From contig NW_026889767.1 of the NCBI RefSeq assembly GCF_033153115.1, forward strand, positions 4,774,001 to 4,838,000: a stretch of DNA of 64,000 bases, read 5' to 3'. The stretch is from Saccostrea echinata (Eukaryota). Each line of letters begins with the position of its first letter. Position 1 is the first letter of the stretch. A program made the translations under genes and the position numbers. Below, piece after piece: positions 1,926-27,690 of the stretch. The notes beneath the pieces are model-generated. The model was not told where the DNA came from. It searched no databases and saw nothing but the letters and a program-made list of their open reading frames with translations.

Positions 1926-4900
1926 TCATAACATCCGCCGTATCATGTAGTTAAGGATTCCGCCGTGCCTAAAGTAGGTCAACTCCACCTCCGTGTCGAA
2001 CCTCGTTTTGACTTGGAATGTTTTGCCGTTACTCAGCTGAAGGAAAAAACATCATCATGATGATCAATTAATTGATTTAAAAAAAAAAAATGAGATAAAT
2101 TTATACTTCATAAAATGTCATTAGTTATGGTTTAGTAAAATACATGTATATCACTACATTATCAGAGCTGGAAAAAAATCTTAAGTTTCAAAAGTTGAAA
2201 AAAATTATCAAAAGAATCTTAGTAACAAATAATGCCAATGTTAAAATGATAATGAGGGATTAACCTGTAACAAAGTGTAAAACAACAATTTCACTGTTCA
2301 AATCAGTGAGAGAATATGTAACTAAGTCAATAAAGATGGTCCAAAACATTCATTGAATTCAATATCACACAGTACAGCAACCAATATGCCTAACTCATGA
2401 ACCTATTAACATTGAATTGGTATGGTTTCACTGAAGGCATGATCATGTTAATATTTGCCTCTAATCTTTTTTTTCCAACTTTACTGAACTACAGCCACTC
2501 TAAATATAGTAACACATGCTTACATTGAAGTGCTAGAGACGAGGGTTTCACTTCGTTATAGACATAATTCATTATATCTTTTAAGTTAATAATATGATTT
2601 TAGCCCACAGAGAATGAAAATCCCTTCACTATAAGCATAAATTCATTATTAACTTGTTTGCTATAAGGGTGTTTTACTGTATAAAGAATTTTGACCTTGA
2701 CCTCTATCACCACTCACCTTGACCTCTAACACTTGACCTGCCGTGAGGTTATCGGGGATATCTACAGAGTAGGTCTCTGTGCCAGTCAGCCCCAGGCTCT
2801 CAGCGGTCTGTCCCTCCAAATACTGGAACGGGATGATCCCCATCCCCACCAGGTTACTACGATGGATTCGTTCATAACTCTCAGCTATGACTGCCTTAAT
2901 TCCCTGTTAGAAAAAAAAGCAATCTTCTAGATTGATGTTACATGCATTCATTCACGCAAATAGTTTAATACGAATACAGTCAAACCTTGTTGTCTCAAAC
3001 TCAATGGGACAGAGAAAAAACTTCGAGATATCCGAGGATTTAAGATATCCAGTGTAAAATATGTAAAGAATAAGAAGTTGGGACTTCAAAATCACTTGGA
3101 CATGTCCATGATATTCGAGATATCAGTGTTTGAGATACCAAAGTTCAACTGTATATGCTCAAAGAAAGAATCCTTTTGTGTAAGTAAGGGAGTTATTTAT
3201 TTATAAAACCTGGATTTGTAAGAACCCTCATGTCTATTCCTCACAAATATTTCTGCTGCTAAAAACCTTCCTATAAATACATGTATGGTAAATGAATTTT
3301 TATATGCAGTAAATGAAGTACTGGAAGTGAGATTCCAGACTATTTCAGAAGAGACTTTAGAAAACAATCGGCTTGTGTGATATTGTGTAACGGGCATTTG
3401 GTACGTCAGACCAGTAGCTCAGTGGTAGACATGGTTAACAGGAGGTACCGAGTTTGAGTTCCCAGTCTAGCTGACATTTTCCCCGGCTTGTTATATTTGG
3501 TGCCCAACAACAAAACCCACGAGTGGTTTAGTGGAATCTTATGAGGTTTTCAGGATGGAAAACCTCAAAAAAGGAGTGTGTTACAGGGATTGAGTATTTG
3601 TTTATGTCTACCACATTTTAAGCAAAATAAATCTGTAGCAATGACATCCAAACTTAACAGCATTAATCATTAACTTCTCATTACCAGTATCCAGGGTCCC
3701 TTGGCTGCCCAGTCTCGGGACGACCCAGACCCATACTCTTTCCCTGCAAGAACAATGACCTGGCGACCATCCTTCTTATACCTCTCAGAGGCATCAAATA
3801 TGTCCATCTACAAAAAAGGGGAAAAAAATGAATTCAAAACAGAATGTCTTAATCTTGAGATTTGCATTAAATGATGGCATTTGAGTTAATAGAATAGTGA
3901 ATCTTAATTGATTCAACAGAGAATGGGGTTGCTGGTAAAAACTCTATTTTCAAAAATTTTCTTTAGTCAATCTGGTTGAATATTGGTTGAATTTTCTCTT
4001 AGAGTTAACAAAAAAAAAACATTAAGTGGGTTGTTTGTAATAACTAAGATGTGTCGATTACTCCACGAATGTCCCCACAAGCAGCCAAAATTTCAAAAGC
4101 AATATTTAGATTTAAATTTGTATTGAACTTGAACTGTATTTTCCGGAAACTGAAAATTTCTTATTTTTTTCCAAGTTCAAGAGGGATATCTCTGTCAAAA
4201 ATCACAGGACCATGACCAAATTCGAATTTGACCTGTATTTTTTGATAATATACCTGCATATGCAATTTCATCCTTATACATACATCCCTACAAAAGTTAG
4301 AGAGTGGAAACTGATAATTTCTTATTTTTTTTGTAAGTTCAAGAGGGATAACTCTGTCAAAAATCAACAGACCAGGACCAAATTTGAATTTGACCTGCAT
4401 ATACATATGTCGTATCCATATGTCAAATTAGATTTGAATGTGTGCAACTGTTGCAGAGATAATGAACAGAAAATGAAGGATGACGGAATGACAGAATGAC
4501 AGAACTGGGCAACACTATATGCCCCGGCCATTTTATGGCGGGGGTATAAAAATAAAAACCTTTTTTTCTCATCAAGATGGTTATCAAAATGAGTCTGACC
4601 CAAATCAAAATGAGACATAAGTCCCTCCCCCCCTCTCCAAAAAAAAAAAGCCTTGTGGTACAAGCATCACCAAAAAATAAAAAGTAACCCTTCTCTTTTG
4701 CACAAAGAGCCCTTCCAATCTCCACTAACCTCATCTCCGGATGGAATGTGTCGGGTCCTAGGACCAGCTTTGCTCATGAACTTGTTGACTAGACGAATAT
4801 TGGCAAAGGTTCCTCTCGCCATCACAGCATCATTCCCTCTACGAGATCCGTATGAGTTAAATTCACGAGGGGTTAACCTGTTAAAAAAATGTGAAGACAA

Positions 4901-7900
4901 TATTTTGCTTGAAAAACCTGCTTTTTTATGTTCGAACTATAAAAGTGAATGTGTTTATTAAAATTTTTATCACATACACGCAGCGGTGAAAAATAGAATC
5001 AAAGTACAGAATATTTCCATATACATGTGTTAGATGTACTTATTTTACAATGCTTCATAATTCAACTTTAGGGGTTTAAAGCAATATATGCACTGTATTT
5101 CCAAAAGCCTATGAATTCAACACTCCAAAGTAAGAACATTTCAAGGGATTCATAAACATACAAAAATTTTTCATACTTTGACTCAAGGGAGCTTAGTCAT
5201 AAGCTCTGAATACCTACCCTCTGTTGCCTAGGTAACGTGCTGCGGGGCTGTTTCTAGCTATACTACCGGCAGGGGATATGTGATCTGTGGTCACAGAATC
5301 TCCCAAATTCAGTAAAACGTGGGCATCTTTGATGCTTTCTGGTTTAGTGACTTCCTTACCCTGTAGAAAGAAGAAAATTTTCATAACAAACTTTTTAGGA
5401 AGAACTTTTGCTCAATATTTATAAAAATTTTATTTACCGCTCTTTATTGAGGGGTCAAACCTTACCATGTTTTCAAAGAAGGGAGGTGACTTGATGTATG
5501 TTGACTTCTCGTCCCAGGGATAAAGCATACCTTCAGGTGCTACTAACGAGTTCCAGCGTTTGTTTCCTTGCTGTTAATTTAATATGTCTAATATTAAATA
5601 TTACTATAATAAACCAGCATCAGACAATTTTTTGGAGAACATTAGTCAAAATCACTTATGCTGAATTAGAATAATTTGTATTTCAATAATTTTCATTACT
5701 GACATTTGACACTAGAAATTGGCTGGCACAATACATTGTACTAACTAAAGATTTCTTTTTAATAAAAAAAAAAAAAAAGAAGAAGCAAAGACATGCTGTT
5801 TTTAGCAACACATTTAAACATTTATCAATGTTAAAAACTATTAAACTTTAAATTCAGACATACTGTTCATATACATTGATATAATTTAAGTATTTCTTAA
5901 ACTCTGATATACAGAACAAAAATAAGAACATTCAAACAGAATAATTGACACCAACCTGGATTCTTGAGTAGACGTCGGTGAACATCGCAGGGACAACAAA
6001 TTCTTTTTCCACTGCCTGTTACAAATAACAACATTGGCATACATATACGTACAAGATAATAATTTTATGAAGGACAAAGAATATTCTGCATGTTAACACT
6101 TTGCATTTTGTCAAGGAAACCATGTTAAGGTCAAGATCTAGTAAATGAAAGGTGCCTACAGATTTTTTAAATTTGAGAAATAAATTCCATAAATTATGCA
6201 TTATAACTTTAGATTGGTCATTTAAGGTGTTTCGGGCATAATATGTAGATGAACAAGACGAAAAATCATATTTTAAACTGTCATTTTCAATGAAAAATTA
6301 AGAAAACCAGTCAGGAATACAGGAGTTTTTTTCCATATCAGACAAAGGACATGTGGCCTCTAAGAAAATGATAATTTGTATGTTCTTGGTCTCTTCTTAA
6401 AATAATATTAAACTGAATATAGGTATCGGGATTACTTTTCACATGACTTCAAATTAAACTCCTTGAAAATACTTTATTTTCTACATAATTAAATTAGACT
6501 GTAATGTACGGGAAAAAGAGAAGTTAAAATTGATTAGGCCAATTCAACTTAATTAGTAGATTATCATCCAGGGTCACTAAAAAATATGGGGCAGGTGGGA
6601 GGGTTTTATTTTTTATTTATCAGTTTTTTTTGTGTCCGATTTTGACAGTAATTCACGCCATCTGAATGTCAGGTTGGGGTGGATTGTTGTCAATATTTCC
6701 GCTCACGAAATCACTGTAGAAATCGATGATTGTTTTTTCATCACTAAAATTTGTAGCATACCAACCCCTTCTTTCGTTCACGCCTGTCACAACACGAGAA
6801 ATAATAAAAACCATTTCTCTTCTTGACATGCGGTTCTTGATGTTTCTAAACAGGAAATACTTTTTGAAATATAAATACAGGAATCAAACACGAAAAATCC
6901 GGGAAACATCATTCTTGCAAAAATAAAAAAAATTGGAGCGGGCCAATTTCTGAGGGGCGGGCGGGGATGATAATCTGTCAATTAAGTTGAATTGGCCTTA
7001 TGACGTCATAATGGATCTAGCACCAAAAAGTTTCTAAAGTCATTTACTAGATCTTGACCTGAAAATTTTAAGACCTTTTATCCCCCCTCCCTCCAAGCCT
7101 TTTGATGCATCTAATCCCTTTCTGTATACATATTTACTCCGTAAGAAACATACCTGGATTTCCTCTCTTGTTGGCCAAATATCTCTAAGATAAACTGGCT
7201 TGCCTTCAGGATTAGTACCTAAAAAGAAAGGAAAAGGATTTTAAAAATAAATCATACAGTACTTGTAGCATATTACAGTGAAAACTGCCTATTCTGACAC
7301 CTGTTGCAATCTGTTTCACTGTGAATCCCAACCTTTTTTTGATTTTCATTCCCATTTTTTCTTTACACCGTGCCATCTGACACACTGACTATTCCTTTAC
7401 AAAAATTTGTTTCCCAGTGCATATCGGATAAGACAGGTTTCACGTACACGTAACTGAAATCACTTCTTTTTAGTGTGTCATTCTGACTGGCTTCAAAAAC
7501 TAAACTTGGGAGGCAGGAAATTTCACTACCTTTGGTCAAAATAACCGTCCTGGATTGAATTGCTTTTTATTTTTATTTTAAGTTTCAGTCATGCAAATGA
7601 CTGTATACAATTGAAATCAAATTTACATGTATATAAATGTCCAAAACAGTGACAGGTACACGAATCATATCAGTGCAGAGGTGAGCATGTACTGTGCATT
7701 TAATTTGTTATTAAAATCTAAATCAGGGTGGGGTTTTTTTTGCAATTCGTGGGAGAGTAAAAAAAAAAACTCTTGTACATTACTCAATGGTACCACATAA
7801 CATACCCCTGTACTTGTAAACTAAAAACCAAACAAACAAACAAAAACCAACACAACAGAGCAAATTCCTACAAGTTTATTCCCTCCAACTTTGTTGCACG

Positions 7901-10900
7901 GGGATAAAAAAGGGTCAAAGAAAACAACTAAACAAAAGTACAGTGGTCGACTAATCCACCATACAGGGTAAATGTTTATATCTCACCCAGTGGATCTTTT
8001 TCAAAGTCAATAAGGACGGTTCCAGCAAGGGCATATGCGATGACTAGGGGTGGTGAGGCGAGGTAATTAGCTCTGGTGAGTGGATGGATCCTTCCCTCAA
8101 AATTCCGGTTCCCTGACAGAACCCCACATGCTACCAGGTCACCCTATAATATGTACATGTAGAAAATGAAAGTAGCATGAAGTGTGTAAAAACCTTGAAC
8201 AACCTTGTGGTCATTATTTTTTATACATAGAAAACCATTTTTTTTTTTTCATTCCAATTAAGCTACAGAGATTATAATTATTCATGTGCATAAATTATAC
8301 ACGCATAAGTTAGATGGGGAAAAAAAAAGATGCAAGTATTTTTCATAAAGTACTATGAATTACCTCTGTATGTGTTTGTTCTAAGTTTTTTTTTCAAAAA
8401 TTAATATACTGTTAAGTACCTGAGACACATTTTTTAGGGCAGCTCATAATTACTTACAATATTAAATATTCCTGAGTATCAAAACCCTATTTACCTTTTC
8501 TATGCCTTCTGACACAGGTTCTGGTAGGGGCCCGCTGTTACCAATGCACGTCATACAACCGTATCCTACGATGTCAAACCTGTCAACATCATTTTTATAT
8601 CATCAATGAAGTTAACTTTATCAGAAAAAAAAGTTCATGATTTTGTTTAAAGTCAATTTTTTGGAAAAGAAATAGATCAATTGGTTTTAGCTGAGCTGGT
8701 TTTTAATACCATCTCTATGCTGTCTAACAATTAAGACTTTTAAAATGGGAGTTTTTCTTTGTACAGGGTTTTTCCATTTTTCTTAAGAATTTTGACACTT
8801 ACACTTTTTTCAAGTACAAGGTGTTCCACTTCTCCCAAGATTTTGACATTTACCCTAGTTTTTCTAGGCAAGGAGTGACTCTTCTTTCCAAAAGATTTTT
8901 TAAATTTACCCTTGTTTTTCTAAGTTCTTCCCTGTGAGTTTTGACACTTACCCTAGCTTTTCTAGGTAAGGGGTGACTCCACTTTCCCTGAGGTAGTAAG
9001 TGACAACTCCACTTCCTGGAGACAGACTGGTTTTGATGTATGGTTTGACACTTAGCCCCGCCTCTACTGCTTTTTTAGCCAATATCCCTGCAGAGACAAA
9101 TTGTATGCAAATTCATCATAAGGTATGCTGATTATGATGCACATGAACTGTAGGATAATCTATGTGAATATTAATATGGAAGACAGATTACTCACAATAA
9201 TATCATATATGCTTTTATGATTTATAGAACCATTCATATGGAGAAAATGTGCAAATACTTCCTACAAGAATTTCCACATTTATAGTCTTTTTGGAATGTT
9301 GAAAGTCTCAAAGACAGAAGGATGAAAGAAAAAAAAATAAAATTGGTATGATGAACTAATGTTTCTACAAGGTATTGCATCAAAAACTGGCAAAAGTATA
9401 CAGTATTTAAACATTAAAAATTTTCTGTTGTGTATTATACCATAGAATTTTTTTTTTCTATGCGTAACAATTTTTGCGCAAATATTCCAAAAGACTGTAA
9501 TTTTCATTTTGCATAGTCCTATTTTCCTGATTCTTCCAATGGTTTATTAGAGTCAAATCTATCGATCTATGACATCTATAAATTTCTTAAACGGTGATAA
9601 TTTTGCAAAAATTCAATTTTTGGTGATCTAAAAAAAAAGCGAAAATTGCATTATCACAAAAATTGCCCATTATATGGTATTTCACCAACACTTACCAGCT
9701 CCCAGCATCACACTAGGGTTACTGGTGTTAGTACAGCTGGTGACGGCTGCTATGACGACAGAACCATGTGACAGGACATACTCTTTGTTGTCGAACACAA
9801 TGGGAACTTTTGTATCCTGCTTATCAGCTGGTATTGCAAAACCCTAAAATAGACCATTCAAAAACAGTTATTACCTGAAGCATTTGATAAAATCATGAAA
9901 ACTTTTAAACACCTCGCTTCTCTTCCCATTTCATACCCTTTGAGTCTAAAATTGCCAGTATTATCTCATACTTAAAATAAATCCGCTTCGAATGAAATTG
10001 ATTTTTACATTTACTATATTTTAGGTGTATATTTCTACCATGTTAATAGCTCTCCTTCTGTGTTCCGTACCACACTGACCCAAAAAAGTGACAAAATTGA
10101 AAATTTCCTCTTTGTAACTGAGTCTTAATACCAATTCATAAAATATCCACATGAATAATTTTCACAACAAACAAATACAGTACCTTGAATCCTATCTTGT
10201 TATCCAGACAGGCCTTGAAGTCAGTCTTCATCTCGGACACAGCGACCTTGTCGTGGGGGCGTTTGGGTCCAGAGCAACAGGACACAACTGTACTCAGGTC
10301 CAGCTCTACCACCTACAGATATTGGAGGAGTATTTTATATTTACTGAGGTCTACATTCTTTCAACCTTCTGTCACAAGAGAGTTCATATAAATATAATTT
10401 ATACAGTATACATGTACCATCAGTAACTAAGGGATTCTCAATAGCCTTGAATGAAAAAAAAAAAAGCTTTAGCAGTGGAAAAAACTCCTGCAGATAAAAT
10501 CAAAATTGCTTTCATTTTTTTCCGTCCTATTCCTACATCTATTTAATTTCACTCATCTTGTAAAATGCCAGTAATATATATTTATACATGTATATTTAAT
10601 GACCCCTCACCTGTGAAAACACTGGATCCTCCTCAGGATTGCTGTAGTTTCTAAACAGTTTGATTTCTCTTAGGAATTTCTCAATGAACTTGATTCTCTC
10701 CTCTGACCTCCCTGCAAGACAAAGCTAGCTTAGAAACACAGGAATATTTTCTAATATGACTATCAAAATATTTATGACTTGAAGTTGTTTTAATGTACAT
10801 TTGCCATCTGAATCCATGTGTAAATTTCACCCAGCACTGATCAGAAATTCTAATATGGGAAACGAAAGTTTTGTATTCTGCATAATCATGCATCCAGTAA

Positions 10901-13900
10901 ATGCGAATCAAACAGAATCTATATATGACAGGTCTTCTTCACAAGCAGTCTGTTTTTTAACACAAACAAATTATCATTTTCTTACATACATGTACATATA
11001 TGTAACCAAAGAGGAAAAACATGTGATGGACAAGACTGGGATTCAAACCTGGGCCCCCTGAATCTCCAGTCAGGGTGCTCTACCAACTGAGCTATCAGGC
11101 CTCTGGCAATCGAACCCATCTGACCGCCACACATATAATCTGTTCACAAACTCCATTTCTTTAAAAATTATATCCTCACCCACTTAGCTCTTGACTCTTT
11201 ATCTACCTGTTTGTCTGAGGTACTCCAGGCTTTTCTCGTCCACAGGGAAGAACCCCACAGTGGCGCCGTACTCGGGACACATGTTAGAGATTGTGGCTCT
11301 GTCAGCGATGGACAGCTCGGACACTCCTGGTCCAAAAAACTCCACAAACTTTCCAACGACCCCGATCTGTCTCAAGTGCTGCAAATTAAGTAAAGAAAAT
11401 TTGGATCCAGTTTAGTTGATTTCACGTTAAATTTGGTAAATGGTTGAAACAATTACATGACTGTATTTTCCTGTTTGATTGTACAGAACTTTTTACAGGT
11501 TGTATATAAAGTTAATGTACAATTTAATTTCTGCACTTTTAACATCTGCATATATTTCTTGAATACCATGAATTTTTCTAAGTCAGTTTTCCAGGCCTTC
11601 AAATGAGTCAAATTGCAATTTCTGTATGTTGAAAAACTTAAATACATGTATCTTTCAATTTTTCAATAAGTCCAAGCATGTTCAAGATAGTAAGGTTAAC
11701 TATAACTAGCTGGAACATCCCAGTAAAGAATACTATAAATTAATTTACCTTGGTAACAGTCAAGACGACATCTGTGGAGGTCACTAGATGGTCCACCTTG
11801 CCTGTCAGTTTATACCCCACAACCTCAGGTAACACCATACTGATAGCCTGACCCAGCATAACAGCTTCTGCTTCAATACCTCCAACACCTGCAAACAAAT
11901 AAAACATCAGCTAGTATTCACAGATGCAGAAATACATGTAGATATTTTAATCTTGTTTTCCATGTCAGAGTCAGACAAAGAAGTCTTGTATTAAGCATTA
12001 GTAGTGTTGAACTTTTAAATTCTAAAATTAAAATCAAGCACAATGGGTACCAATCATTAATCACTAAAGACAACATTCATTTTGTGTAGTGCAAACAAAA
12101 CATTTTTAATATTGCGAGCTAATTTATCTCTGGATTAAGTAATCTCTCTGGACAACGTTTGAATACTTGTTCATTCTTACCACTGTTTACGTAACTTAAA
12201 AATTGTCAATATTCAATTTTTTAGTCCTCCTACTTATAAACACCTTACTTCCATTCTAAGTACTTACCCCAGCCTACAACCCCTAGTCCGTTGATCATGG
12301 TGGTGTGGGAGTCTGTCCCCACGAGACTGTCTGGGTACAAGAGACCACCCTCATTGAAGACGACCCGGGCCAGGTACTCAAGATTCACCTGATGGACGAT
12401 GCCTGACCCTGGGGGAACTATCAACATGTTCTTCAGAGCAGAGGCTCCCCACTAAAAATGGAGGAATAATATAAATATATAGCTGATGGTTAAAACTGAA
12501 AATAAAACACTGTAAAATCACTTATTTTTTAAAGGGGTTTATTTCCTGAAGAGACCCATGGATACAAGACTAGCCCCCCCCCCCCCAACTATATGTGGCT
12601 CAACATATTTAACATTCAAAACTGCAATACAGTATCATTAGGTTTACACTTTTTTCAACACCCCCCCCCCCCCCCCTTCCCCAAGATCTAATTTTTTTCC
12701 CCTCAAACCACAAAAATTTTACCTCACAAAAATGTGATTTTTCAGCATAAATTAGTTTAATGTAAAAACTACTAAACATAGTATTACCTCAGTAGTGAAT
12801 GACAAAGAGAAGTAATCAAGCTCACAATTTATGTTTAAAAAATTTCTTCAGCTTGTGTCATTTTTGTCAAAATATTGGTAACTTACAATACCTTTAGAAA
12901 AACAAATCTTTCTCTATTTCTCTCAAATTCCAGCTCCTGATTTTGTTCTAAAGCATCAGCACTGCAAAGTATAAACAATTCCAAGATAAAATACATTTCC
13001 ATTATATAAATGTGTTATACATTCTGTATGTCAGGCTGCAAAAGAATTTGCTTTAGATTCATTTTGAATTTTCCCTTTCACATGCACACAAGCAGAATTC
13101 CCCTTTCTTGACTGTCAAATAAACATACTTATGATGCATGTACACTGTGAGTGCACAAGCAGACAAAAGAGGTAAAACATAACATGTTGTGATGTTTTGG
13201 TAATTCTGTTGCAAAGGCTAAATATTTCTAAATAAATAAAAAGATATAAAAAAAATATAGACAATGAAATGAATATTTTTCACTTCCCTTTGAATAATTT
13301 CACGCCAGCTCAACTTTTAAATCATGCATACTGTAAACCAACTATTATTCGAGTCAACTTTTATTCGCGATTCGTCAGTTTGAAATCAATCCGCGACGAT
13401 TAATTTTCGCGACTGAGGAAACATTCTCTACAAATACAAAGCAAAATTAATGGTTCACGGCGATTAATATTCGCGAGTTCAAGTATGTCGCGAAACTCGC
13501 GAAAATTTCTCACAAGCGAATAAAAGTTGGTTTACAGTACATTATGCCTATTGAATTAAAGCTATACAATAATATTTACTAAAATAATAATAAAAAAATT
13601 GAAAGCCCCACCCAACCTGCAAAAAAGTATATATAAGCAAACAACAGTAAAGTCAAAATGTAATGAAAACAGAATGATATATAATTCAATTTATATTAAA
13701 AACAAGCATGCATGAAATCAAAGCTGTTCACAGTTTATCAAAATATACTACCAACCCCTGTGTCTTCTGCTTGTGAAAAGGACAAATGTAATCGGAGATG
13801 GGAGACCGAGGGTCATGACACAGGTTGCAGGTTGACCTCTGTGACCCCTGAGCCCCTGAACTTTGACCTCCTCCAGGGTTGGGAGAATATTTCAATATAC

Positions 13901-16900
13901 TGAAACAGAATGACAGGAGTGAGGTTACAATTAAGAGTTTGCTATATGTTTAAGGTTTGAGCGTGAAGGTTTTTAAAGGATGAACCATGCTCTGTTTAAG
14001 GGAGATAACTTTTAAATTAAATAGTTCACAATGTTTCCTGTTAGAAAATTTATGTCTTTGGAAATAAGTTATTAGTCATTTTACTGTACCCAAGGAATTT
14101 TCACCCCCCATTTAATTTTTTTGCCCCCTCATCCTCACATGGGCAAATTCGATGGAGACTAATAGTGAAATTTCACCAAGGGGACAAGATTCAAGGTCTA
14201 GGACGAGGCTTTGCCGAGTCCTAGACCGTGAATCTTGGCCCCGAGGTGGAATTTCACTATTCCCACACGAGTATGTAATGAATGATTATTTTTCTCGCAT
14301 TATTTTATCCAAAATAATGGCCTGTCAATCACGTCGCCATAATAGGGCTAAAAATATATTCTTTTAATTTTCCATCTAATTAAAAATCTAAATACACCAT
14401 CGGAGAGAGCGTACCTGAAAAAGGTTTACACACAGTGTAAATGATAAAATGAATTTCAGTCCATGTAAATTAATTAGATAGATAAAAACTGGGAATAAAA
14501 AACTTATCTATCCGATAGCGTACACATTCATTCAAGAAGAATCCTTCCACGATCTAAAAATAGTGCCATTTAAAAAGTGAAAATACGACAATATTTTGAA
14601 TGAAAATAAGTTTATCTTAATAAGTTAAATGACAACATTTTGAGTATATGTAATATTTTTTAACATTGTTACAATTTTTTATATAAAGACGGAATGTTTA
14701 CGTTATCGTTCGCGGCGTAGTAATACACTGTGTAAGACAGAAAAATCTCACACTGATGTCTCACACCGGACAAGTCAATCTTACACTGGTGATTCTGCCA
14801 GAAAGAGTTATCTCTCTTTTATAATAAACACAACTGTATTTTAGCAAAGTATGTAATGGAGCAAAATCATTTTCATGACAGGACAATAACGAACCTTTAA
14901 ACAACATCTTAAATTGTAAAACTATATCATGTTTCAAATCTGCACAAATTTCATTCATTTGGTAGATTTTCAGGGAAACATTGCCAAAATTACGAAAAAA
15001 TATCATTTCATTGAGCAGAGAATTGTTCTCAGTTAAGGTTCATCATCCCTCTGTATATTCACATAAAAATTTTTTCACCCTAATGATTTTTTAAAATTAT
15101 TCTGATTTATAATTAATATGCATACAATTTCAGTGTACTTTACAGGCAAAATTTGATGGAAATTGTACTTGAACTTGACAATTTTAAGTAAGAATTATAG
15201 ACATTTATCCCAGGGAGAGTTATCTCTCTTCCCTCAGGGTCAATGAACCTTAAATATGTTGTTGACAAATAGCAGTTAAAGGACTTATCGCATGATCCTT
15301 CAAAAATCGTAATTTTATGAAAAATATTATCTATAACCTTATTTATTAAAATACTGATTACAATAAACATTGTTGGAAGCATATTTTAAGAGATATTGAG
15401 AGTTGAAATTCAAATACGATAAAATAAGTGATTTGGTCATCCACAACGCAGAAAATTCAGGTTGTATTGCGTATATTTTAGTAAGATTAATGAAGGGCTG
15501 ATCAGCCATTGTCGCCTTTGACGTCACAGAGTCATGTGATCGCTATCTAATTAACTTAGATTTTTAATTCAGGGGTTATCATTTGACTCAATAATTGGTC
15601 AATTACTGCAATTTATCCACAGTAAAAACACAGAATTTATGAATTGTGGTCATAAGCATGATAAGGAATGTAATACGCTTTTAATTTCAAATAATTTAAA
15701 AACATGCGATAAGTCCTTTAAATGATATACATGTAAATAAATAGACAAAAAAGCTAGCATAACTAATCAAAATCTAATGTGGAGAAGAGAGACATAAGAT
15801 AATTGATCAAAACAAGAATTGAGTTCCGAAATATAAAAAAAAGTTTGCATGCATCAATTTGAGTACAATATTTGTATATCTTATAAAATAAAATCCATTA
15901 ATGTACATGTAGAAATCTTCAGATTTTCACATACCATTTGCCTGAAGACTACTTGAAGCTTACTCAAGTCATAACTATCCATGTACTTGTATGTGTGCAG
16001 ATTTTGAACAAATAAGAAATCTAATGCATATGAAGTCAACAACTTGTTTTTTTAACCCCCCCCCCAAAAAAAAAAATCAGGGAAGTGCAGATATCAGGAT
16101 ATTCATGAGATTGTAAAGATTAGACAGTCATGAAATTTTTGTTTTTCATCAGTAAAAAATTGCAACATACTGTAATTTCCTTTTTTTTTCCATTTTTTAG
16201 AAGGTGGGAAAGTTAATTTTATATATTTCAGACTGACCTCAAATTTCTCGAGAGTACTTTGTATATTCATGATGAAAGAAATACAGTGTAAGTGAGTGAT
16301 AAGGTCAAAGAGCAAAAGAATAGACAAAATCCCTCCCTTTGGTCATTACCTCCTTGACACGTCCACCTGAATCGAGTGGTCTATCACGAGGTCTGCTGGA
16401 CAGATGGGGTTTATTTTCTCTGGATTTCCCCCCAGTCTCTTCACAGCATCCCTCATGGCAGCAAAATCTACCACAGCTGGTACTCCACTAAGAGGCAAAA
16501 ATAAAAAAAATTAACAAAGCTCAAGTTTGAGGATTTTTTCTTAAATCTAGTAGTAAATCTTTTCTTAAATCAGCACTTTTAATCAAGCACTGATAGTATG
16601 TTTGTAGATGTTGAAAAGAATAGTCAATAGCCCATAGAAGCTTGTTTAACAGACTTGGCAAAACATAAACAGCCAAACAAAGGCTTGGTTTTGTTTTGTT
16701 TGTTGTTTAACGTCCCTCTCGAGAATTTTTCACTCATATGGAGACGCCACCACTTGCCGGTGGAGAGCTGCAAATTTTGTCCTATATTCGGCACTTACGG
16801 CCATTGAGCAGTGAGGGATCTTTTTTGTGCCAGCACCTACTGCGACACAGGACCTCGGTTCCTCATCCGAAGGACCGGTCTCCACATCCCACAGTGGGAT

Positions 16901-17822
16901 TCGAACCCGCAACATAAGGATCAACTCCTTACTTCGCGACTCTAGAGCAGACGCTCTAACCACTGCGCCACGTGGGCAACACAAAGGCTGGGTGATGAAA
17001 AGGAAAAAGGAAATTAAGGAGGAATAATCCTTTGCTAAGAGAGATAAATCTAAATTTAAGAAATCATATAGGATTCCTTGACAAAATTTTTATCTTCAAC
17101 ATTCATTTGCCTCAAATTTTGCCCCAAAATGAGTGGAAAAAAATTGATCTAGATTTCATTTATATCTTCTTTTATTATGTGTATAAGATTTGTCTTAACT
17201 AAAAATCCCATGTTAGTGACCAGAGGGATTAGATTTACCCTTAAAGCTGTCTTACGTGAAATCTTGTAAAATCACCCTGGCAGGTTTGAATGGGATCTCA
17301 ACACTCTGTCCCTGATTTTTCTCCCAGTTCAAAATGTTCTCCACATCTTTCTTCAGCACTTGAAACTCATCACAATTTCTCACTGCAGACTCCAATAATA
17401 CTCGAATTGAAAATGGCAACTTTTCTGAAACAAAAAAAACAACAAAATATTATTTAAAGTAAATATTTCGTAGAAAGCAATTTTTGTACAGATTCAAATT
17501 TTATTTTCCAAGCAACAGTAATAATGTTAACAATACCTTTTTTCCCTTTCTTTCTAGGGTTGCTAAAATAACTGACACTGGATTGCTTAAATAGCCGACA
17601 CATTTAAAATTAAATTTTGATTAACTTTTCAGAACTTTCAGTAGAAGATAAAGGCAGTGCTCTCTCATATTAAACATGTTAAAAACAAACCACTAACCAT
17701 ATCTGGCATCTTTGAGATCTGCCAAATTAAAGAAAGTGAAGCTTTTCCCATCAATTTCAACATTCTTCTTTATTCCTCCATAAGGGTTTGTGGATCCTGT
17801 AAATAGTTAAGTAAAAAATACC

Positions 17823-17853
<31 letters not shown>

Positions 17854-19496
17854 GTATAAGTTAGAAAAATATAAAGCATTGACACTAATTCAATCCAGAC
17901 ACAGCTTATCAAATAATATCAAGTATATTATAAGCTACTGAACTGTAATTCCCTTGAAAGGAAAAATCAAAAAGGATTCAGTTATAATATCACTAATCAG
18001 TCAGGGGTGAGACTGAAATCCGTCATTTTTGAAAAATGATGGATAATCGTCATATTTACTAAGTACGTATTTTCGTCATTTTTGTCAATATGACTTACTA
18101 TCGTCATATTTTCTTTTTCAACTTAATTCTTCTATCCTGGTTACATAAAAGCGAAATTTGAATTCACCGCTGAAAGAAGAGTGTTTACGCAAGTTTCATT
18201 TCATCCGGGTCACTAATTACTGCCGACCACGTGCGTTAGAACATCAACATGGAAGGTGAAAGTTATTATTTAGCGGTAAAATGTCGAATTTTGGTAGAAC
18301 TAATTCGCCATTTTTACATGGCTTTTAGCCCTATAAAAACATATAGTACACCGTCGGGAAGAATACGTACTTGTAGAGAAAAGTCTCGACAAAAAGTTAA
18401 AGCCATAAAAAAGTAGTGCGCCCCGTAAAACAAGCGAGATATTTCAGTGCGCCCAGACCCTCCATTTTGAAAAAAGACGGAATATCGTCATTTTCGTCTT
18501 CTTTCCTATTTAATGCAAATAAATTGACAAATAACTCTTCCACTCTTATTTTTGCTTGGGAAATTTATACTGTCAACATAACCAGTATTGTAGTCAACTG
18601 TATTAGAGAAATGAAGTTCGTTTACGATGTTTTTTGTCCTTTTTTCGGTTGGTGGATCTAACATTTTTCAAAGAGAGGTAACTCGGTATTCTATAAACAC
18701 TCTAAATTTTTATGACTGTTTTTGGTCATTTTCTTAAAAATGACGAGTTTAAGTCATAATAAAAATTTTATTTTATGGCTTAAAATCGTCATTTTTAAAA
18801 TGACGGATTTCAGTCTCACCCCTGACTGCTAATAGAAAAAAAAATTAAATTACAATGACCTTTCTTGTTGAATGGTTTGGATATTATTTCTAACATAAAT
18901 CAAAGGCTTTTACAATATGTGGATCTGTAGCTCTCTATTTTGTCCGTCCAACTTTTCTTTCCCAAAGAACTACATCTCAGCAGCTAATGCATATCAATAC
19001 ATAGTGGGAAAGGGGGGTGGGGTGTTAAGCTTCACCAAAATTAAAAGCACAACATCAACTTTACAAAAAATCTCATTTAACAACTTAAAGATTTAACGTG
19101 AACCCGTGCTCAAGACATTGTTAACAAAATGAGCTCATGTTTTTTTTCCCCTTTTTTTCCTACAAAATTCTCGAACAGAGGTACAAATAAATATATAACA
19201 ATGTAAATGCAAAAATATAAGTAAACATTATTTTTTTTTTGACCCGTAGCCTAACTGTCACTGCACCGATAAATCCTGAGTAGGCCTAAGATCAAAGTAC
19301 ATTTCAACAGTGCAAATTACGCAAGACTTTGAAAGTGAACCGTTTCTATGCCATCTTTTTGTGGATCAAAATCTCACAAGCATCTAAATTGGAGGTAAAA
19401 TTATTTGTATTGACCGACTAAAATAAATGAGCACAAACTAAGAGAGAATATATAAAACAAATTGAGATGTTGTGATTCTCTACCTTCGGTCGCCAT
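1926..19496 (-). CDS. ACO1: Cytoplasmic aconitate hydratase / iron regulatory protein (IRP1-like); 893 aa without, 941 aa with the cassette exon
   Basis: Hand-spliced GT-AG exons in transcript order: 19484-19496, 17698-17796, 17256-17424, 16350-16487, [13756-13899 cassette], 12892-12961, 12268-12451, 11749-11888, 11207-11378, 10611-10711, 10184-10312, 9696-9843, 8952-9087, 8495-8579, 7987-8143, 7154-7218, 5956-6015, 5466-5570, 5218-5360, 4730-4877, 3685-3807, 2718-2903, 1926-2036. All phases are compatible (2682 nt without the cassette). Motifs: [49 protein letters not shown] and [12 protein letters not shown] (three 4Fe-4S Cys), [38 protein letters not shown]-terminus [12 protein letters not shown]. 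Confidence 0.98.
2977..3151. mobile_element. MITE, Tc1/mariner-pogo type
   Basis: Imperfect TIRs cagtcaaaccttgttgtctcaaac / gtttgagataccaaagttcaactg, with TA on both sides. Confidence 0.75.
3408..3475 (+). mobile_element. Degenerate tRNA-derived SINE head
   Basis: gtagctcagtggtaga (A box-like) ... gagtttgagttccc (B box-like); no intact cloverleaf. Confidence 0.45.
4042..4550 (+). mobile_element. Non-autonomous Helentron/HINE-like (CvA/pearl-type) element
   Basis: aactaagatgtgt start, two ~160-bp core repeats (aagttcaagagggata...gaatttgacctg), (acagaatg)n microsatellite, and 3' hairpin tatgccccggcc...ggcgggggtata followed by an A-run. Confidence 0.75.
6129..7059. mobile_element. Outer TIR element (Kolobok/piggyBac-like, TTAA-type site) carrying a nested MITE
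   Basis: ggtcaagatctagtaaatga (6129-) is the reverse complement of tcatttactagatcttgacc (-7059); flanks are ttaa / tgaa. Confidence 0.65.
6537..6997. mobile_element. PIF/Harbinger-type MITE
   Basis: TIRs ggccaattcaacttaatt...gattatcatcc / ggatgataatc...aattaagttgaattggcc, with TTA on both sides. Confidence 0.8.
7276..7444. mobile_element. Short degenerate MITE (pogo-like)
   Basis: ta-cagtgaaaactgcctattctga ... tcggataagacaggtttcacg-ta imperfect inverted ends. Confidence 0.5.
8790..8992 (-). repeat. Degenerate ~45-55 bp tandem repeat derived from an ACO1 exon end plus splice donor
   Basis: Three decayed copies of ttttgacacttaccctagcttttctaggtaaggggtgactccactttccctgag precede the real junction at 8951/8952. 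Confidence 0.8.
11028..11100 (-). mobile_element. tRNA-derived SINE head / tRNA pseudogene
   Basis: Reverse complement reads gcctgatagctcagttggtagagca...caggtttgaatcccagtc with A and B boxes; acceptor and anticodon stems are imperfect. Confidence 0.55.
13331..13537. mobile_element. MITE with TA target site
   Basis: TIRs ctgtaaaccaact / agttggtttacag, TA on both sides, internal tcgcga palindromes. Confidence 0.85.
13756..13899 (-). CDS. Candidate cassette exon of the ACO1/IRP gene encoding an IRP2-like Cys-rich insert (48 codons)
   Basis: Acceptor ttctgtttcag| and donor GG|gttggt; 144 nt, phase 2-2, no stops. Encodes (S)[47 protein letters not shown](G) between [10 protein letters not shown] and [12 protein letters not shown]. 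Confidence 0.9.
14161..14261. repeat. ~100-bp imperfect palindrome, probably part of a non-autonomous DNA element extending to ~14770
   Basis: aatagtgaaatttcacc...aagattca.ggtctaggac pairs with gtcctagacc.tgaatctt...ggtggaatttcactatt. Confidence 0.75.
15280..15717. mobile_element. TTAA-target MITE (Kolobok-like)
   Basis: ttaa-aggacttatcgcatg ... catgcgataagtcct-ttaa; perfect 15-bp TIR. Confidence 0.85.
16686..16980 (-). mobile_element. Full-length tRNA-derived SINE
   Basis: Head on the minus strand has A box (gtggcgcagtggttagagcg) and B box (ggttcgaatccc); (aaac)n tail; target duplication acaaaggct at 16677-16685 and 16981-16989. Confidence 0.85.
17998..18828. mobile_element. Non-autonomous DNA transposon in ACO1 intron 1
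   Basis: Perfect ~32-bp TIR cagtcaggggtgagactgaaatccgtcatttt; ctaat flanks both ends. Confidence 0.85.
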
Positions 19497-25989: not shown

Positions 25990-27690
25990 ATGTTTCTCGA
26001 CGAATCAGATTCAACTCATATACAGGGGCAATATGAGAACCATCTATCCTTCTGTATTCAGTAATCCAGAAGTGAAAATAGAATTAGATAAATTACATGA
26101 TCAGTACATACTGGTCCCTGCAGACAAAGCAGGTAACAACATTGTCTTTGTTTGTAAGGCTCATTATATTAAATGTATTTTAGAGGAACTTGGATTTAAT
26201 TCTACAAGTGGTAATGCAACTTATTCTCATAGTTCCCTTTCTAAGGAAGACATTCTTTAAAATCATATGTCATGATCAGTTTTGAATATTTTTAATATTC
26301 CAAACAACCAAAATGAATTTGAATTACCATATTTATATTGGATTCTGAAACTTCATAAAAATCCTTACAAACAAAGATACATAGCGGGTTCCAGTAAATG
26401 CTTAACCAAGCCTCTTTCTTTACTCCTCACTAAGAAATTAACAGTAGTGAAGGAGAAACTGCAAGAGTACTGTGCAACAATATATTTTAGAAGTGATGTA
26501 AATCAGATGTGGATACTTAAAAATTCCAAGGAACTTTTGGAAAATTTGAATTTAAAAGATTTTACCAAAATCAACAGCTTAAAAACGTACGACTTTTCAA
26601 CTTTATACACAACCATTCCCCACGATAAATTAAAGTCCAGGCTTTTTGATATCATTGACAGCTGCTTTTTCAATAAAAATGGAAATCGTAAATTTACTTA
26701 CCTTGTCATTGGTCATTTGCAAAATTATTTTGTTAAAAACCATTCTGATTGTACACACAAGTACTCTGAAGTTGACATTAAAAAGATGCTTGAGTTTCTG
26801 GTTGACAATATCTATGTGGTTTTTGGAGACCAGGTCTTCCAACAATCTATTGGTATTCCCATGGGTACCAATTGCGCCCCGTTATTAGCAGACCTTTTTT
26901 TGTATTCATATGAAGCAGAATTTGTCCAAAATCTTGTACGTGAAAAGAAGAAAACACTTGCTGTGGCCTACAACTCGACATTTAGATATATCGACGACGT
27001 ATTGTCAATTTACAATGGCTATTTCCATTCTTATGTCGATACGATATATCCCGGTGAGCTTGAGATAAAGATACTACAGAGTCTGACACATCTGTTTCAT
27101 ATTTGGATAGGATATTTTACTTGAAAAAGACGTTAATGGTAATCTAACAACAAAGCTTTATGATAAACGTGATGACTTTAGCTTTTCAATCGTCAACTTC
27201 CCTTACTTATGCAGCAATATACCTTCATCACCTGCATACGGGGTATATATCTCTCAGTTGATTCGATACGCAAGAGCATGCTCTACGTATGTACAATTTC
27301 TAAAACGAGGTAAATTATTGACAAACAAGTTTATGAAACAAGAATATCAGCTGTCTCGTTTAAAGTCATCATTTCGTAAGTTTTATGGTCGATACAATGA
27401 CCTTGTCAGCAAATACAATTTATCATTGAGTCAAATGCTGACTGACGTTTTTCACACTAATTGTTAGGCCATTATTTACACACTGAATTGTCGACGGATT
27501 TTTCCATCATTTCCCGATCATGACAAGGAGCACACGGCGGGTGTGACCGGTCGGCAGGGGATGCTCACTCCTCCATGGCACCTGATCCCACCTCTGATGT
27601 TTGGAGGTCCGTGTTTGCTCTGCTCCTATTTTGTATTGTTTAATGGACTTTTGAGCTCGATTACTGTTCGTTATCTCCATATATTTCATG
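25990..27690 (+). mobile_element. 5'-truncated, decayed Penelope-like retroelement (Naiad-type reverse transcriptase)
   Basis: VPADKAGNN, YWILKLHKNP, TYDFSTLYTTIPH, GIPMGTNCAPLLADLFL, FRYIDD, LIRYARACS. The ORF ends after the RT thumb with no C-terminal GIY-YIG, and there is an insertion between motifs A and B. Premature stop at 26258 and frameshifts near 26270 and 27070-27115. Confidence 0.88.

What the first reader, a model, noticed from the sequence alone, without database searches (positions are those of the whole stretch)
13756..13899. Hidden IRP2-type insert exon in an invertebrate aconitase/IRP1 gene: one gene may make both IRP1-like and IRP2-like proteins
Seen: a GC-rich island inside the 3.4-kb intron between the [10 protein letters not shown] and [12 protein letters not shown] exons. 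It has a polypyrimidine/AG acceptor, a GTTGGT donor (the same donor hexamer as the exon at 5956), is 144 nt, phase 2-2 and stop-free. It encodes [48 protein letters not shown]. Established: vertebrate IRP2 (IREB2) differs from IRP1 by a single-exon 73-aa Cys-rich insert at this position, which as I recall starts AIQNAPNPGGG, contains TCRGSC and ends LCPFH, the CPFH being the described heme-regulatory motif. IRP2 is usually regarded as vertebrate-specific. All three anchors occur here in order. Inference: the insert predates the ACO1/IREB2 duplication as a skippable exon. Skipping gives an 893-aa IRP1-like protein and inclusion a 941-aa form with a possible heme/redox-sensing loop. Vertebrate IRP1 and IRP2 could be subfunctionalised splice isoforms. 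I cannot tell whether automated annotations already list this isoform.
Basis: partly seen in the sequence, partly recalled or inferred. Interest (0 to 1): 0.93.

Follow-up and report, generated by a model that had tools for sequence, protein, structure and literature searches.

The report
IRP2-type insert exon in invertebrate aconitase
A 144-base exon in the only iron-regulatory-protein/cytosolic aconitase gene of this invertebrate (probably a bivalve) is the counterpart of the 73-residue insert thought to be unique to vertebrate IRP2, so that insert is far older than the vertebrate IRP1/IRP2 split.

Summary
Window 13756-13899 (minus strand) is a 144-nt, stop-free, frame-preserving segment with a pyrimidine tract/AG acceptor and a GG|GTTGGT donor. 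It lies in the 3.4-kb intron between the ...[10 protein letters not shown] and [12 protein letters not shown] exons of a single-copy IRP1-type aconitase gene.

Openness alone is not significant: 70% of shuffled introns give such a segment. The other evidence is decisive.
- More than 20 homologous exons from other animals keep PNPGGG, a Cys pair and CPFH, and conservation stops at the splice sites.
- pN is 0.13-0.40 against saturated pS of 0.79-0.96.
- Another genome (L015) has the exon in the same intron.
- An intron-less 940-aa mRNA contig (L013) and a published 942-aa ark clam cDNA contain it.

Homology to the IRP2 insert is supported by several results.
- The position and the codon split at the upstream edge are the same.
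- PNPGGG is the 7th residue after the junction in both, and CPFH is followed by 6 residues in both.
- The invertebrate and vertebrate exon profiles match with hhalign E 5e-9.
- An invertebrate-only profile finds vertebrate IRP2 exons at E 3e-4 among 5.8 billion proteins.

The exon is not "hidden", because related species' cDNAs include it. The protein keeps IRP1-type catalytic residues.

The parts
13756..13899 (-). Insert exon (144 nt, 48 codons). It encodes [11 protein letters not shown]...C-x2-C...[10 protein letters not shown] and is the counterpart of the vertebrate IRP2 73-residue exon.
   Evidence: sequence and frame; homologues in other animals; hhalign E 5e-9 against vertebrate IRP2 exons; pN much lower than pS.
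13900..13925 (-). Acceptor region: pyrimidine tract ctcactcctgtcattctgtttcag.
   Evidence: The ORF translations of the homologues end in ...CFS/FCS just before the exon, which is a translated Y-tract plus AG.
13750..13755 (-). Donor GTTGGT (T at +3, G at +4). Homologues have a similar form: gttggt in L015, gttagt in L014, and GLV/GFV/GSV in the ORF read-throughs.
16350..16487 (-). Upstream constitutive exon (GVPAVVDF...[14 protein letters not shown], ending in AG of a split codon).
   Evidence: IRP1 residues 89-133, IRP2 residues 92-135.
12892..12961 (-). Downstream constitutive exon (T + [23 protein letters not shown]).
   Evidence: IRP1 residues 135-157, IRP2 residues 215-233.
1926..19496 (-). 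The whole IRP1-type cytosolic aconitase gene: 23 coding exons, 941 aa with the insert exon and 893 aa without.
   Evidence: TIGR01341 positions 19-876 matched exon by exon.

Best explanation
Window 13756-13899 (minus strand) is a genuine protein-coding exon of the genome's single IRP1-type cytosolic aconitase/iron regulatory protein gene. It is the orthologue of the exon that encodes the "IRP2-specific" 73-residue insert of vertebrates.

The exon adds a 48-residue loop to domain 1, directly after the [14 protein letters not shown] segment. The loop is rich in Gly, Pro and Cys. Three elements are conserved: PNPGGG at its start, a Cys pair (C-x2-C) in the middle, and a Cys-Pro-Phe-His motif six residues before its end.

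Shown:
- The exon is conserved and under purifying selection.
- It is spliced into mature mRNA in related invertebrates.
- It is homologous to the IRP2 insert.
- The host gene is single-copy and keeps IRP1-type catalytic residues.

Inferred:
- The bilaterian ancestor's IRP gene already carried this exon. After the vertebrate duplication IREB2 kept it and ACO1 lost it.
- The loop binds a ligand through its invariant Cys and His residues (heme through the CP motif, or a metal ion) and tunes the RNA-binding/aconitase switch or a protein interaction. I put this at about 50%.
- The exon is included in some transcripts and skipped in others. I put this at about 45%. It is untested here.
For: Sequence and frame.

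Single-copy gene: PF00330 and TIGR01341 scans of the 923-Mb genome find only this gene and one other aconitase, on C10. The IRP-specific exon and the insert exon each occur once.

Conservation:
- phmmer of the 47 aa against 1.84 billion proteins gives 9 hits. Six of them, fetched, are ORF calls that read through the same exon in other animals' genomic contigs.
- Alignments A1-A3 and the trimmed set show invariant PNPGGG and CPFH, and a conserved Cys pair in nearly all. Similarity ends at the exon edges.
- The frame is kept across exon-equivalent lengths of 35-207 aa.
- pN is 0.13-0.40 against pS of 0.79-0.96.

Orthologous position: L015 has the exon between the DHSVQVDVAR and ANSLQKNQQLEFERN exons. 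P0028 links it to the downstream IRP exons, and P0035 (Mya arenaria, NCBI) links it to the upstream ones.

Expression:
- L013 is an intron-less contig with a complete 940-aa ORF that contains the insert.
- The ark clam cDNA is 942 aa, with an extra Ser138-Gly189 between [10 protein letters not shown] and EFERNKERFVFL (PMC8947174).

Homology to IRP2:
- The upstream R45 aligns with IRP2 K136, and the downstream A1 with IRP2 residue 211. PNPGGG therefore starts at the 7th residue after the junction in both, and CPFH is followed by 6 residues in both.
- P0021 against the PDB hits only 6vcd_A, residues 132-209, at E 0.043.
- Profile A2 ranks 6vcd_A first, at E 0.06.
- The invertebrate-only profile A2 recovers vertebrate IRP2 exon ORFs at E 3e-4 to 7e-3 among 5.8e9 proteins. 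They were verified as IRP2.
- hhalign of A3 against A4 gives probability 95.9% and E 5e-9.
- At most 2 of 5000 composition-preserving shuffles reach the real score.
- In the L013 alignments, the match to IRP2 runs into the insert from both sides, whereas against IRP1 residues 140-187 stay unaligned.
Against: - The window peptide alone, and profile A1, did not hit IRP2 in the PDB at E<=10. With profile A3, IRP2 ranked third at E 1.4. Plain sequence statistics against the human chain are therefore marginal and depend on which homologues are in the profile.
- No RNA evidence exists for this species itself.
- The taxa of most homologues are unknown.
- The ligand-binding idea has no direct support. 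AlphaFold gave only pLDDT 63.5, about 70-77 in the Cys/His half. No fold match was found and no Pfam family.
- The literature reports that the human insert is unstructured and dispensable for iron-dependent degradation (PMC3048577, PMC2267205).
Confidence: 0.88

Rival explanations
1. The exon is real and homologous to the IRP2 insert, but it is constitutive in this species. The gene then makes only the 941-aa protein, and there is no IRP1-like/IRP2-like isoform switch.
For: Every spliced sequence I could find that covers this junction includes the exon: L013, the ark clam cDNA and the Mya arenaria model P0035. The acceptor has a strong pyrimidine tract. The GTTGGT donor is also used by a constitutive exon of the same gene, so it does not mark an optional exon.
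Against: The razor clam sequence PV963841 has its cluster cysteines at 443/509/512, which leaves no room for an insert. The earthworm cDNA is 890 aa. The exon length is a multiple of 3 in all homologues, and both splice forms regenerate the same Ser codon (AG|T), so skipping costs nothing. I had no search left with which to look for skip-form transcripts.
Confidence: 0.45
2. The segment is a chance open stretch in an intron, or an unexpressed relic, and is not a functional exon.
For: Open, phase-compatible AG..GT segments of this size are common in shuffled introns, occurring in 70% of them. No reads from this species were available.
Against: Conservation across many animals stops at the splice sites. 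pN is far below pS. The frame is kept through many indels. The segment is present in a full-length mRNA and in a cloned cDNA. It is single-copy and not a repeat.
Confidence: 0.02
3. The invertebrate insert and the vertebrate IRP2 insert arose independently at the same intron, and their resemblance is convergent.
For: The similarity is confined to short motifs (PNPGGG, a Cys pair, CPFH) separated by variable, low-complexity linkers. Some searches against the human chain were not significant.
Against: The two inserts share the same intron and the same motif order. The motif distances from both junctions are identical. Profile-profile comparison gives E 5e-9, the database search gives E 3e-4 in 5.8e9 sequences, and the shuffle test gives p of about 4e-4 or less.
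Confidence: 0.03

Closest known systems
Vertebrate IRP2 (IREB2) 73-residue insert, encoded by a separate exon (human residues 137-210 in PDB chain 6vcd_A)
   Same: It sits at the same insertion point, between ...DHS(I/L)Q(V/I)D(xx)(R/K) and ...(L/V)(E/K)xNQE(L/V)EF. PNPGGG starts at the 7th residue after the junction, there is a Cys pair in the middle, and CPFH lies 6 residues before the downstream exon. The upstream codon split is the same, judged from ORF read-throughs of vertebrate contigs; the downstream split is my own reading of those translations, not checked on DNA.
   Different: It is 48 rather than 73 residues, with C-x2-C instead of C-x3-C or C-x4-C. The host protein keeps IRP1-type catalytic residues and is the only IRP gene in the genome. 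Overall the flanks are more similar to IRP1 than to IRP2 (77.7 against 62.9 bits for the upstream exon; 1457 against 1279 bits for L013).
Ark clam SbIRP-1 cDNA (942 aa; PMC8947174)
   Same: It is a bivalve IRP1 with an extra Ser138-Gly189 segment between [10 protein letters not shown] and EFERNKERFVFL. The segment starts with Ser and ends with Gly, as predicted here, and the total length is within one residue of this gene's 941 aa. The paper also reports that no IRP2 was found in that genome.
   Different: It comes from a different species and its segment is 3 residues longer. The authors called the segment poorly conserved among molluscs and absent from vertebrate IRP1, and they did not compare it with IRP2. 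Its sequence is in a figure that I could not read, so its motifs are unverified.
Vertebrate IRP1 / cytosolic aconitase (ACO1; PDB 2b3x, 3sn2)
   Same: It has the same fold family (TIGR01341, PF00330 plus PF00694). The three cluster cysteines and the IRP1-type active-site residues are present.
   Different: Vertebrate IRP1 has a single residue (R134) where this gene can place 49 residues.
Heme regulatory (Cys-Pro) motifs, as described for human IRP2 Cys201/His204 (Ishikawa 2005, cited in PMC3904948)
   Same: A Cys-Pro-Phe-His element is invariant in all homologues.
   Different: No binding data exist for any invertebrate insert. The role of the human motif in degradation has been rejected experimentally (PMC3048577).

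Membership tests
AcnA/IRP aconitase family (TIGR01341; Pfam PF00330 + PF00694) | Match over the whole length of the family profile | tested here: met
   Exon-by-exon matches cover TIGR01341 positions 19-876 on one strand of C18. The joined model has no internal stops. The homologous mRNA L013 scores 532 bits on PF00330 and 134 bits on PF00694.
AcnA/IRP aconitase family (TIGR01341; Pfam PF00330 + PF00694) | Three [4Fe-4S] cluster cysteines and IRP1-type active-site Arg/Ser residues | tested here: met
   [31 protein letters not shown] and GSGSSRDW are present in the window's exons. They align to the IRP1 equivalents.
AcnA/IRP aconitase family (TIGR01341; Pfam PF00330 + PF00694) | Aconitase activity and IRE binding | not testable with these tools
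   This needs biochemistry.
IRP2 (IREB2) orthologue | Insert exon of the 73-residue type at the domain 1 junction | tested here: met
IRP2 (IREB2) orthologue | IRP2-type substitutions in the aconitase active site (SGNKNFEGR, GSGNSRDW, SCTNNCNPS in 6vcd_A) | tested here: not met
   The window gene has the IRP1-type residues.
IRP2 (IREB2) orthologue | A second IRP paralogue beside ACO1, closer to IRP2 than to IRP1 | tested here: not met
   There is only one IRP-type gene. The flanks score higher against IRP1.
IRP2 (IREB2) orthologue | FBXL5-dependent, iron-dependent degradation | not testable with these tools
   A hemerythrin-domain scan of the genome found nothing. This is inconclusive because the domain would be split by introns.
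IRP2 73-residue insert exon family | Same intron position and the same reading-frame split at both ends | tested here: inconclusive
   Position: met. Frame split: the window's is shown directly. The vertebrate split is consistent with the ORF read-throughs at the upstream end; at the downstream end it is my own reading of those translations, and no vertebrate DNA was available to check either.
IRP2 73-residue insert exon family | PNPGGG, then a Cys pair, then CPFH, in that order and in register with the junctions | tested here: met
IRP2 73-residue insert exon family | Statistically supported sequence relationship | tested here: met
   hhalign E 5e-9. The profile search gives E 3e-4 in 5.8e9 sequences. 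The shuffle test gives at most 2 of 5000. However, the window peptide alone is not significant against the PDB.
Heme regulatory motif (Cys-Pro) | Cys-Pro dipeptide in a flexible region, followed by a hydrophobic residue | tested here: met
   ICPFH is invariant across homologues. The model of this region has only moderate confidence, pLDDT about 70-77, so flexibility is not shown here.
Heme regulatory motif (Cys-Pro) | Heme binding | not testable with these tools
   This needs spectroscopy.
zf-CCHC zinc knuckle (PF00098) | C-x2-C-x4-H-x4-C spacing and a Pfam match | tested here: not met
   The spacing here is C-x2-C-x11-C-x2-H. There is no Pfam hit. The Atlas look-alikes scored only 0.80-0.83, and there is no fold match.

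The most novel reading that the evidence does not exclude
The domain treated for 30 years as IRP2-specific would be an ancestral bilaterian exon of a bifunctional IRP/aconitase gene, spliced in or out to make two regulators from one gene. Vertebrate IRP1 and IRP2 would then be the two isoforms frozen into separate genes. The invariant Cys, Cys, Cys-Pro-x-His residues would form one heme- or metal-sensing site whose function predates FBXL5-based control.
Probability: 0.3. Interest if true: 0.9.

Novelty: new variant of a known kind. Interest (0 to 1): 0.72.

Why it matters
Reviews describe the 73-residue insert as the feature that distinguishes IRP2 from IRP1, and its function is still unresolved. 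The proposed role in iron-dependent degradation was rejected experimentally, and the heme-binding role is debated.

The same exon, with the same invariant residues, sits in the single catalytically competent IRP gene of an invertebrate (probably a bivalve). This has three consequences:
- It dates the insert to before the protostome-deuterostome split.
- It separates the insert's function from the loss of aconitase activity and from vertebrate-specific regulation.
- It singles out a handful of residues (PNPGGG, two Cys, CPFH) as the ones selection has kept.

The old question becomes testable in a simpler one-gene system, and vertebrate work gains a ranked list of residues to mutate. If the exon proves to be optional, this would also be a clear case of splice isoforms becoming separate genes after duplication.

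Tried and rejected
- Window peptide against the PDB: no hit at E<=10.
- Profile A1 against the PDB: IRP2 was not found, and the top rows were chance matches to the PI..ICPFH stretch of catalase KatE. With A3, IRP2 was only third.
- P0021 region search: only itself was returned.
- Cluster look-up: no names or taxa for the homologues.
- ESM Atlas: zinc-knuckle-like look-alikes at 0.80-0.83, below the level that means anything.
- AlphaFold of the 47-aa exon with 12 homologues: pLDDT 63.5. Foldseek against the PDB gave nothing below E 7.
- Pfam: no family for the exon.
- Hemerythrin (FBXL5) scan of the genome: no match, which is inconclusive.
- Ten literature searches (nine ran; one was rejected as malformed) found no paper linking an invertebrate IRP insert to the IRP2 insert. 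Piccinelli & Samuelsson 2007 and Dycke 2007 are not held, so prior notice there cannot be excluded.
- Spliced model: I did not send it to any search tool. Exons were searched one by one by reference. The joined coding sequence was built only inside a script, to count length and stops.
- P0040 and P0041 look like mammalian, possibly human-like, IRP2 exon ORFs. They were listed once and were not fetched, aligned or searched further.
- The weak-donor argument for optional splicing was rejected, because a constitutive exon of the same gene uses the same hexamer.
Full report
**1. The observation**

On the minus strand the sequence reads ...ctcactcctgtcattctgtttcag|T ATA TTG AAA TAT TCT CCC AAC CCT GGA GGA GGT ... 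AAG ACA CAG GG|gttggt. The exon runs from 13899 to 13756 and is 144 nt long.

The upstream exon ends at 16350 with ...GTG TCA AGG AG|gtaatg. The downstream exon starts at 12961 with cag|T GCT GAT GCT. Inclusion therefore reads R-S-ILKY...KTQ-G-ADALEQ, and skipping reads R-S-ADALEQ. Both are in frame.

The exon is a GC island, 50% against 32% for the intron. The donor hexamer GTTGGT is also used by the constitutive exon 6015-5956.

I rebuilt the gene with a full-length homologue as guide. It has 23 coding exons, an ATG at 19496 (MATE...), a stop at 1926-1928 and no internal stops. The joined sequence was used only inside a script, for counting. It was never sent to a search; all searches were done exon by exon, by reference.

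Openness alone proves nothing. In 70% of shuffled copies of this intron there is at least one open, phase-compatible AG..GT segment of 144 nt or more, and the real intron holds others.

**2. It is a real, selected exon**

*Homologues in other animals.* phmmer of the 47 residues against 1.84 billion representative proteins gave nine hits. Six of them, fetched, are short ORF calls on genomic contigs of other animals that read straight through the same exon. Two profile searches raised the number to more than 20 distinct sequences.

*Pattern of conservation.* In all of them PNPGGG and CPFH are invariant, and a Cys pair lies between in nearly all. Similarity stops exactly at the exon edges. Upstream lies a translated pyrimidine tract plus AG (...CFS), and downstream lies G-L/F/S-V, which is GG|GT... 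read through.

*Frame and substitution pattern.* The exon-equivalent length varies from 35 to 207 residues, yet both anchors stay in one frame. For the four copies with DNA, synonymous sites are saturated (pS 0.79-0.96) while pN is 0.13-0.40. That is the signature of purifying selection on this reading frame.

*Copy number.* The exon is single-copy in the 923-Mb genome and is not a repeat.

**3. It lies in the orthologous intron elsewhere and is spliced into mRNA**

A scan of JGI metagenome contigs returned three loci.

- L015 (JAAUYG010063549.1) is genomic. The ...[12 protein letters not shown] exon is at 1238-1408, the GVPAVV...DHSVQVDVAR exon at 1779-1913, the insert exon at 3998-4144 (acceptor ttgctttttgcag, donor GG|gttggt) and the ANSLQKNQQLEFERN exon at 7524-7595.
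- L013 (Ga0210351_1333111, 3412 nt) has no introns. It carries a complete 940-aa ORF that reads ...DLVIDHSVQVDVARS VLQYAPNPGGG...VCPFHELETEG ANALEKNEELEF.... This is a mature mRNA with the exon included.
- L014 is a genomic contig carrying the exon alone.

Three further sequences bear on this.

- P0035, named by NCBI "ACOC-like protein [Mya arenaria]", joins ...[11 protein letters not shown] directly to ILLNTPNPGGG....
- P0028 links a long-insert version of the exon to the downstream IRP exons.
- The ark clam SbIRP-1 cDNA is 942 aa. It has [10 protein letters not shown] at 124-133 and EFERNKERFVFL at 200-211, and an extra segment Ser138-Gly189. The authors call this segment poorly conserved among molluscan IRP1s and absent from vertebrate IRP1, and they report that IRP2 is missing from that genome (PMC8947174). 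They do not compare the segment with IRP2.

The exon is therefore not hidden in related species.

**4. Homology with the IRP2 insert**

*Position.* The upstream exon aligns with human IRP1 residues 89-133 and with IRP2 residues 92-135. The downstream exon aligns with IRP1 residues 135-157, and its fifth residue aligns with IRP2 residue 215. IRP1 has one residue between the two exons. This gene has 49 when the exon is included, and human IRP2 has 74.

*Register.* In IRP2, PNPGGG is residues 143-148, so it starts at the 7th residue after K136. CPFH is residues 201-204 and is followed by six residues before position 211. The window's exon has exactly the same two offsets.

*Statistics that were weak.* The window peptide alone and profile A1 did not reach IRP2 in the PDB. 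With profile A3, IRP2 ranked third at E 1.4.

*Statistics that support homology.*
- The divergent homologue P0021 hit only one PDB chain out of 177,635: IRP2 residues 132-209, at E 0.043.
- Profile A2 ranked IRP2 first, at E 0.06.
- The same invertebrate-only profile, searched against 5.8 billion proteins, recovered ORF read-throughs of vertebrate IRP2 insert exons at E 3e-4 to 7e-3. One of them, P0033, matches IRP2 at E 1e-25 over three collinear exons.
- Profile against profile (invertebrate A3, vertebrate A4) gives probability 95.9% and E 5e-9.
- At most 2 of 5000 composition-preserving shuffles of the vertebrate exons score as high against an invertebrate-only HMM.
- BLASTP of the window exon against P0033 gives two collinear segments, at E 0.005 and 0.015.
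- In full-length context, L013 aligned to IRP1 leaves residues 140-187 unaligned. Aligned to IRP2, the match runs into the insert from both sides, through PNPGGG and from CPFH onward, without gaps.

I regard common origin as established and convergence as very unlikely.

**5. What kind of gene carries it**

The genome has one IRP-type gene and one other aconitase, on contig C10, probably the mitochondrial enzyme.

The window gene keeps [31 protein letters not shown] and GSGSSRDW. These are the IRP1 versions; human IRP2 has SCTNNCNPS, SGNKNFEGR and GSGNSRDW. The flanks score higher against IRP1 than against IRP2.

The long product is therefore an IRP1-type, probably catalytically competent protein that carries the IRP2-type loop. 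It is not an IRP2 orthologue.

**6. How it most likely works**

*Shown.* The exon inserts a loop rich in Gly, Pro and Cys right after the [10 protein letters not shown] segment. PMC8947174 lists that segment as a putative RNA-binding region.

*Inferred.* Selection has kept very few residues across protostomes and vertebrates: PNPGGG, the Cys pair, and C-P-F-H. That pattern suggests a ligand site (heme through the Cys-Pro motif, or a metal) joined by flexible linkers of free length.
- For the human insert, heme binding at Cys201/His204 has been reported (Ishikawa 2005, cited in PMC3904948).
- Reviews, however, state that the insert is unstructured and not needed for iron-dependent degradation (PMC3048577, PMC2267205).
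- AlphaFold gave only moderate confidence for the Cys/His half, pLDDT 70-77.
- There was no fold or Pfam match.

I put ligand binding at about 50%.

**7. Alternative splicing**

*For an optional exon.* A razor clam sequence has its cluster cysteines at 443/509/512, which leaves no room for an insert (PMC12896564). An earthworm cDNA is 890 aa (PMC4184891). Skipping preserves the frame in every species.

*For a constitutive exon.* Every spliced sequence that I could inspect across this junction includes the exon. The donor type is not special within this gene.

I put skipping in this species at about 45%.

**8. Novelty**

The field describes the insert as unique to IRP2 (PMC2267205, PMC3048577). 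It describes IRP2 as a product of a later duplication "in higher eukaryotes" (PMC3048577). Invertebrate papers report only IRP1 (PMC8947174, PMC7034838, PMC4184891).

None of my ten searches (nine ran; one was rejected as malformed) found a paper that connects an invertebrate insert with the IRP2 insert. Two relevant papers are not held, so I cannot exclude earlier notice.

The exon itself is already in public cDNAs and gene models. What appears to be new is the recognition that it is the IRP2 insert, and that it sits in a single-copy, IRP1-type gene.

**9. Verdict**

The exon is real and homologous to the IRP2 insert exon (confidence about 0.9). The claim of an origin before the vertebrate duplication is supported. 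The "one gene, two proteins" switch and heme sensing remain hypotheses.

Noticed in passing
P0022, P0023, P0028, P0031 (proteins): One group of homologues has a much longer insert exon, about 165-207 residues. It is Ser/Pro-rich and carries an extra Cys cluster, CCREACCRLPGNENKVCDPLCPFH. In P0028 it is followed, in frame, by the downstream IRP exons. The taxon is unknown.
   Followed up: partly
P0035 (NCBI ACOC-like protein, Mya arenaria, 224 aa): This annotated model joins the insert exon to WGAKALKNM... part-way through the exon. It omits CPFH and the ...NQELEFERN exon, so it looks like a mis-predicted or partial gene model.
   Followed up: no
window 17823-17850 (minus strand), in the intron before the second coding exon: A run of 28 A lies just upstream of the acceptor of exon 17796-17698.
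   Followed up: no
window 19496 (minus strand): The first coding exon is tiny (ATG GCA ACA GAG G|gtagag, MATE). It was found only by pattern and by its resemblance to the MATP... start of L013. The 5' UTR and promoter were not examined.
   Followed up: partly
PDB chains 6lfk_A / 8j4r_A (E. coli KatE catalase), residues 430-449: The stretch IPINKPICPFHNHQRDG matches the exon's ...PI.D.ICPFH..KT.G consensus. It outranked or rivalled IRP2 in two profile searches (E 0.3-0.8). I take this for chance.
   Followed up: no
window 26282-27124 (+): This is a 280-aa open reading frame, the longest in the first 30 kb, and it lies outside the aconitase gene. It was not examined.
   Followed up: no
G000:C10:3779844-3784966 (+): This is the only other aconitase-family gene in the genome, presumably the mitochondrial aconitase. 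It was not examined further.
   Followed up: no
L013:1-52 and 2876-3412: The full-length environmental IRP mRNA has a 52-nt 5' UTR and a 3' UTR of about 540 nt. Neither was checked for an iron-responsive element.
   Followed up: no
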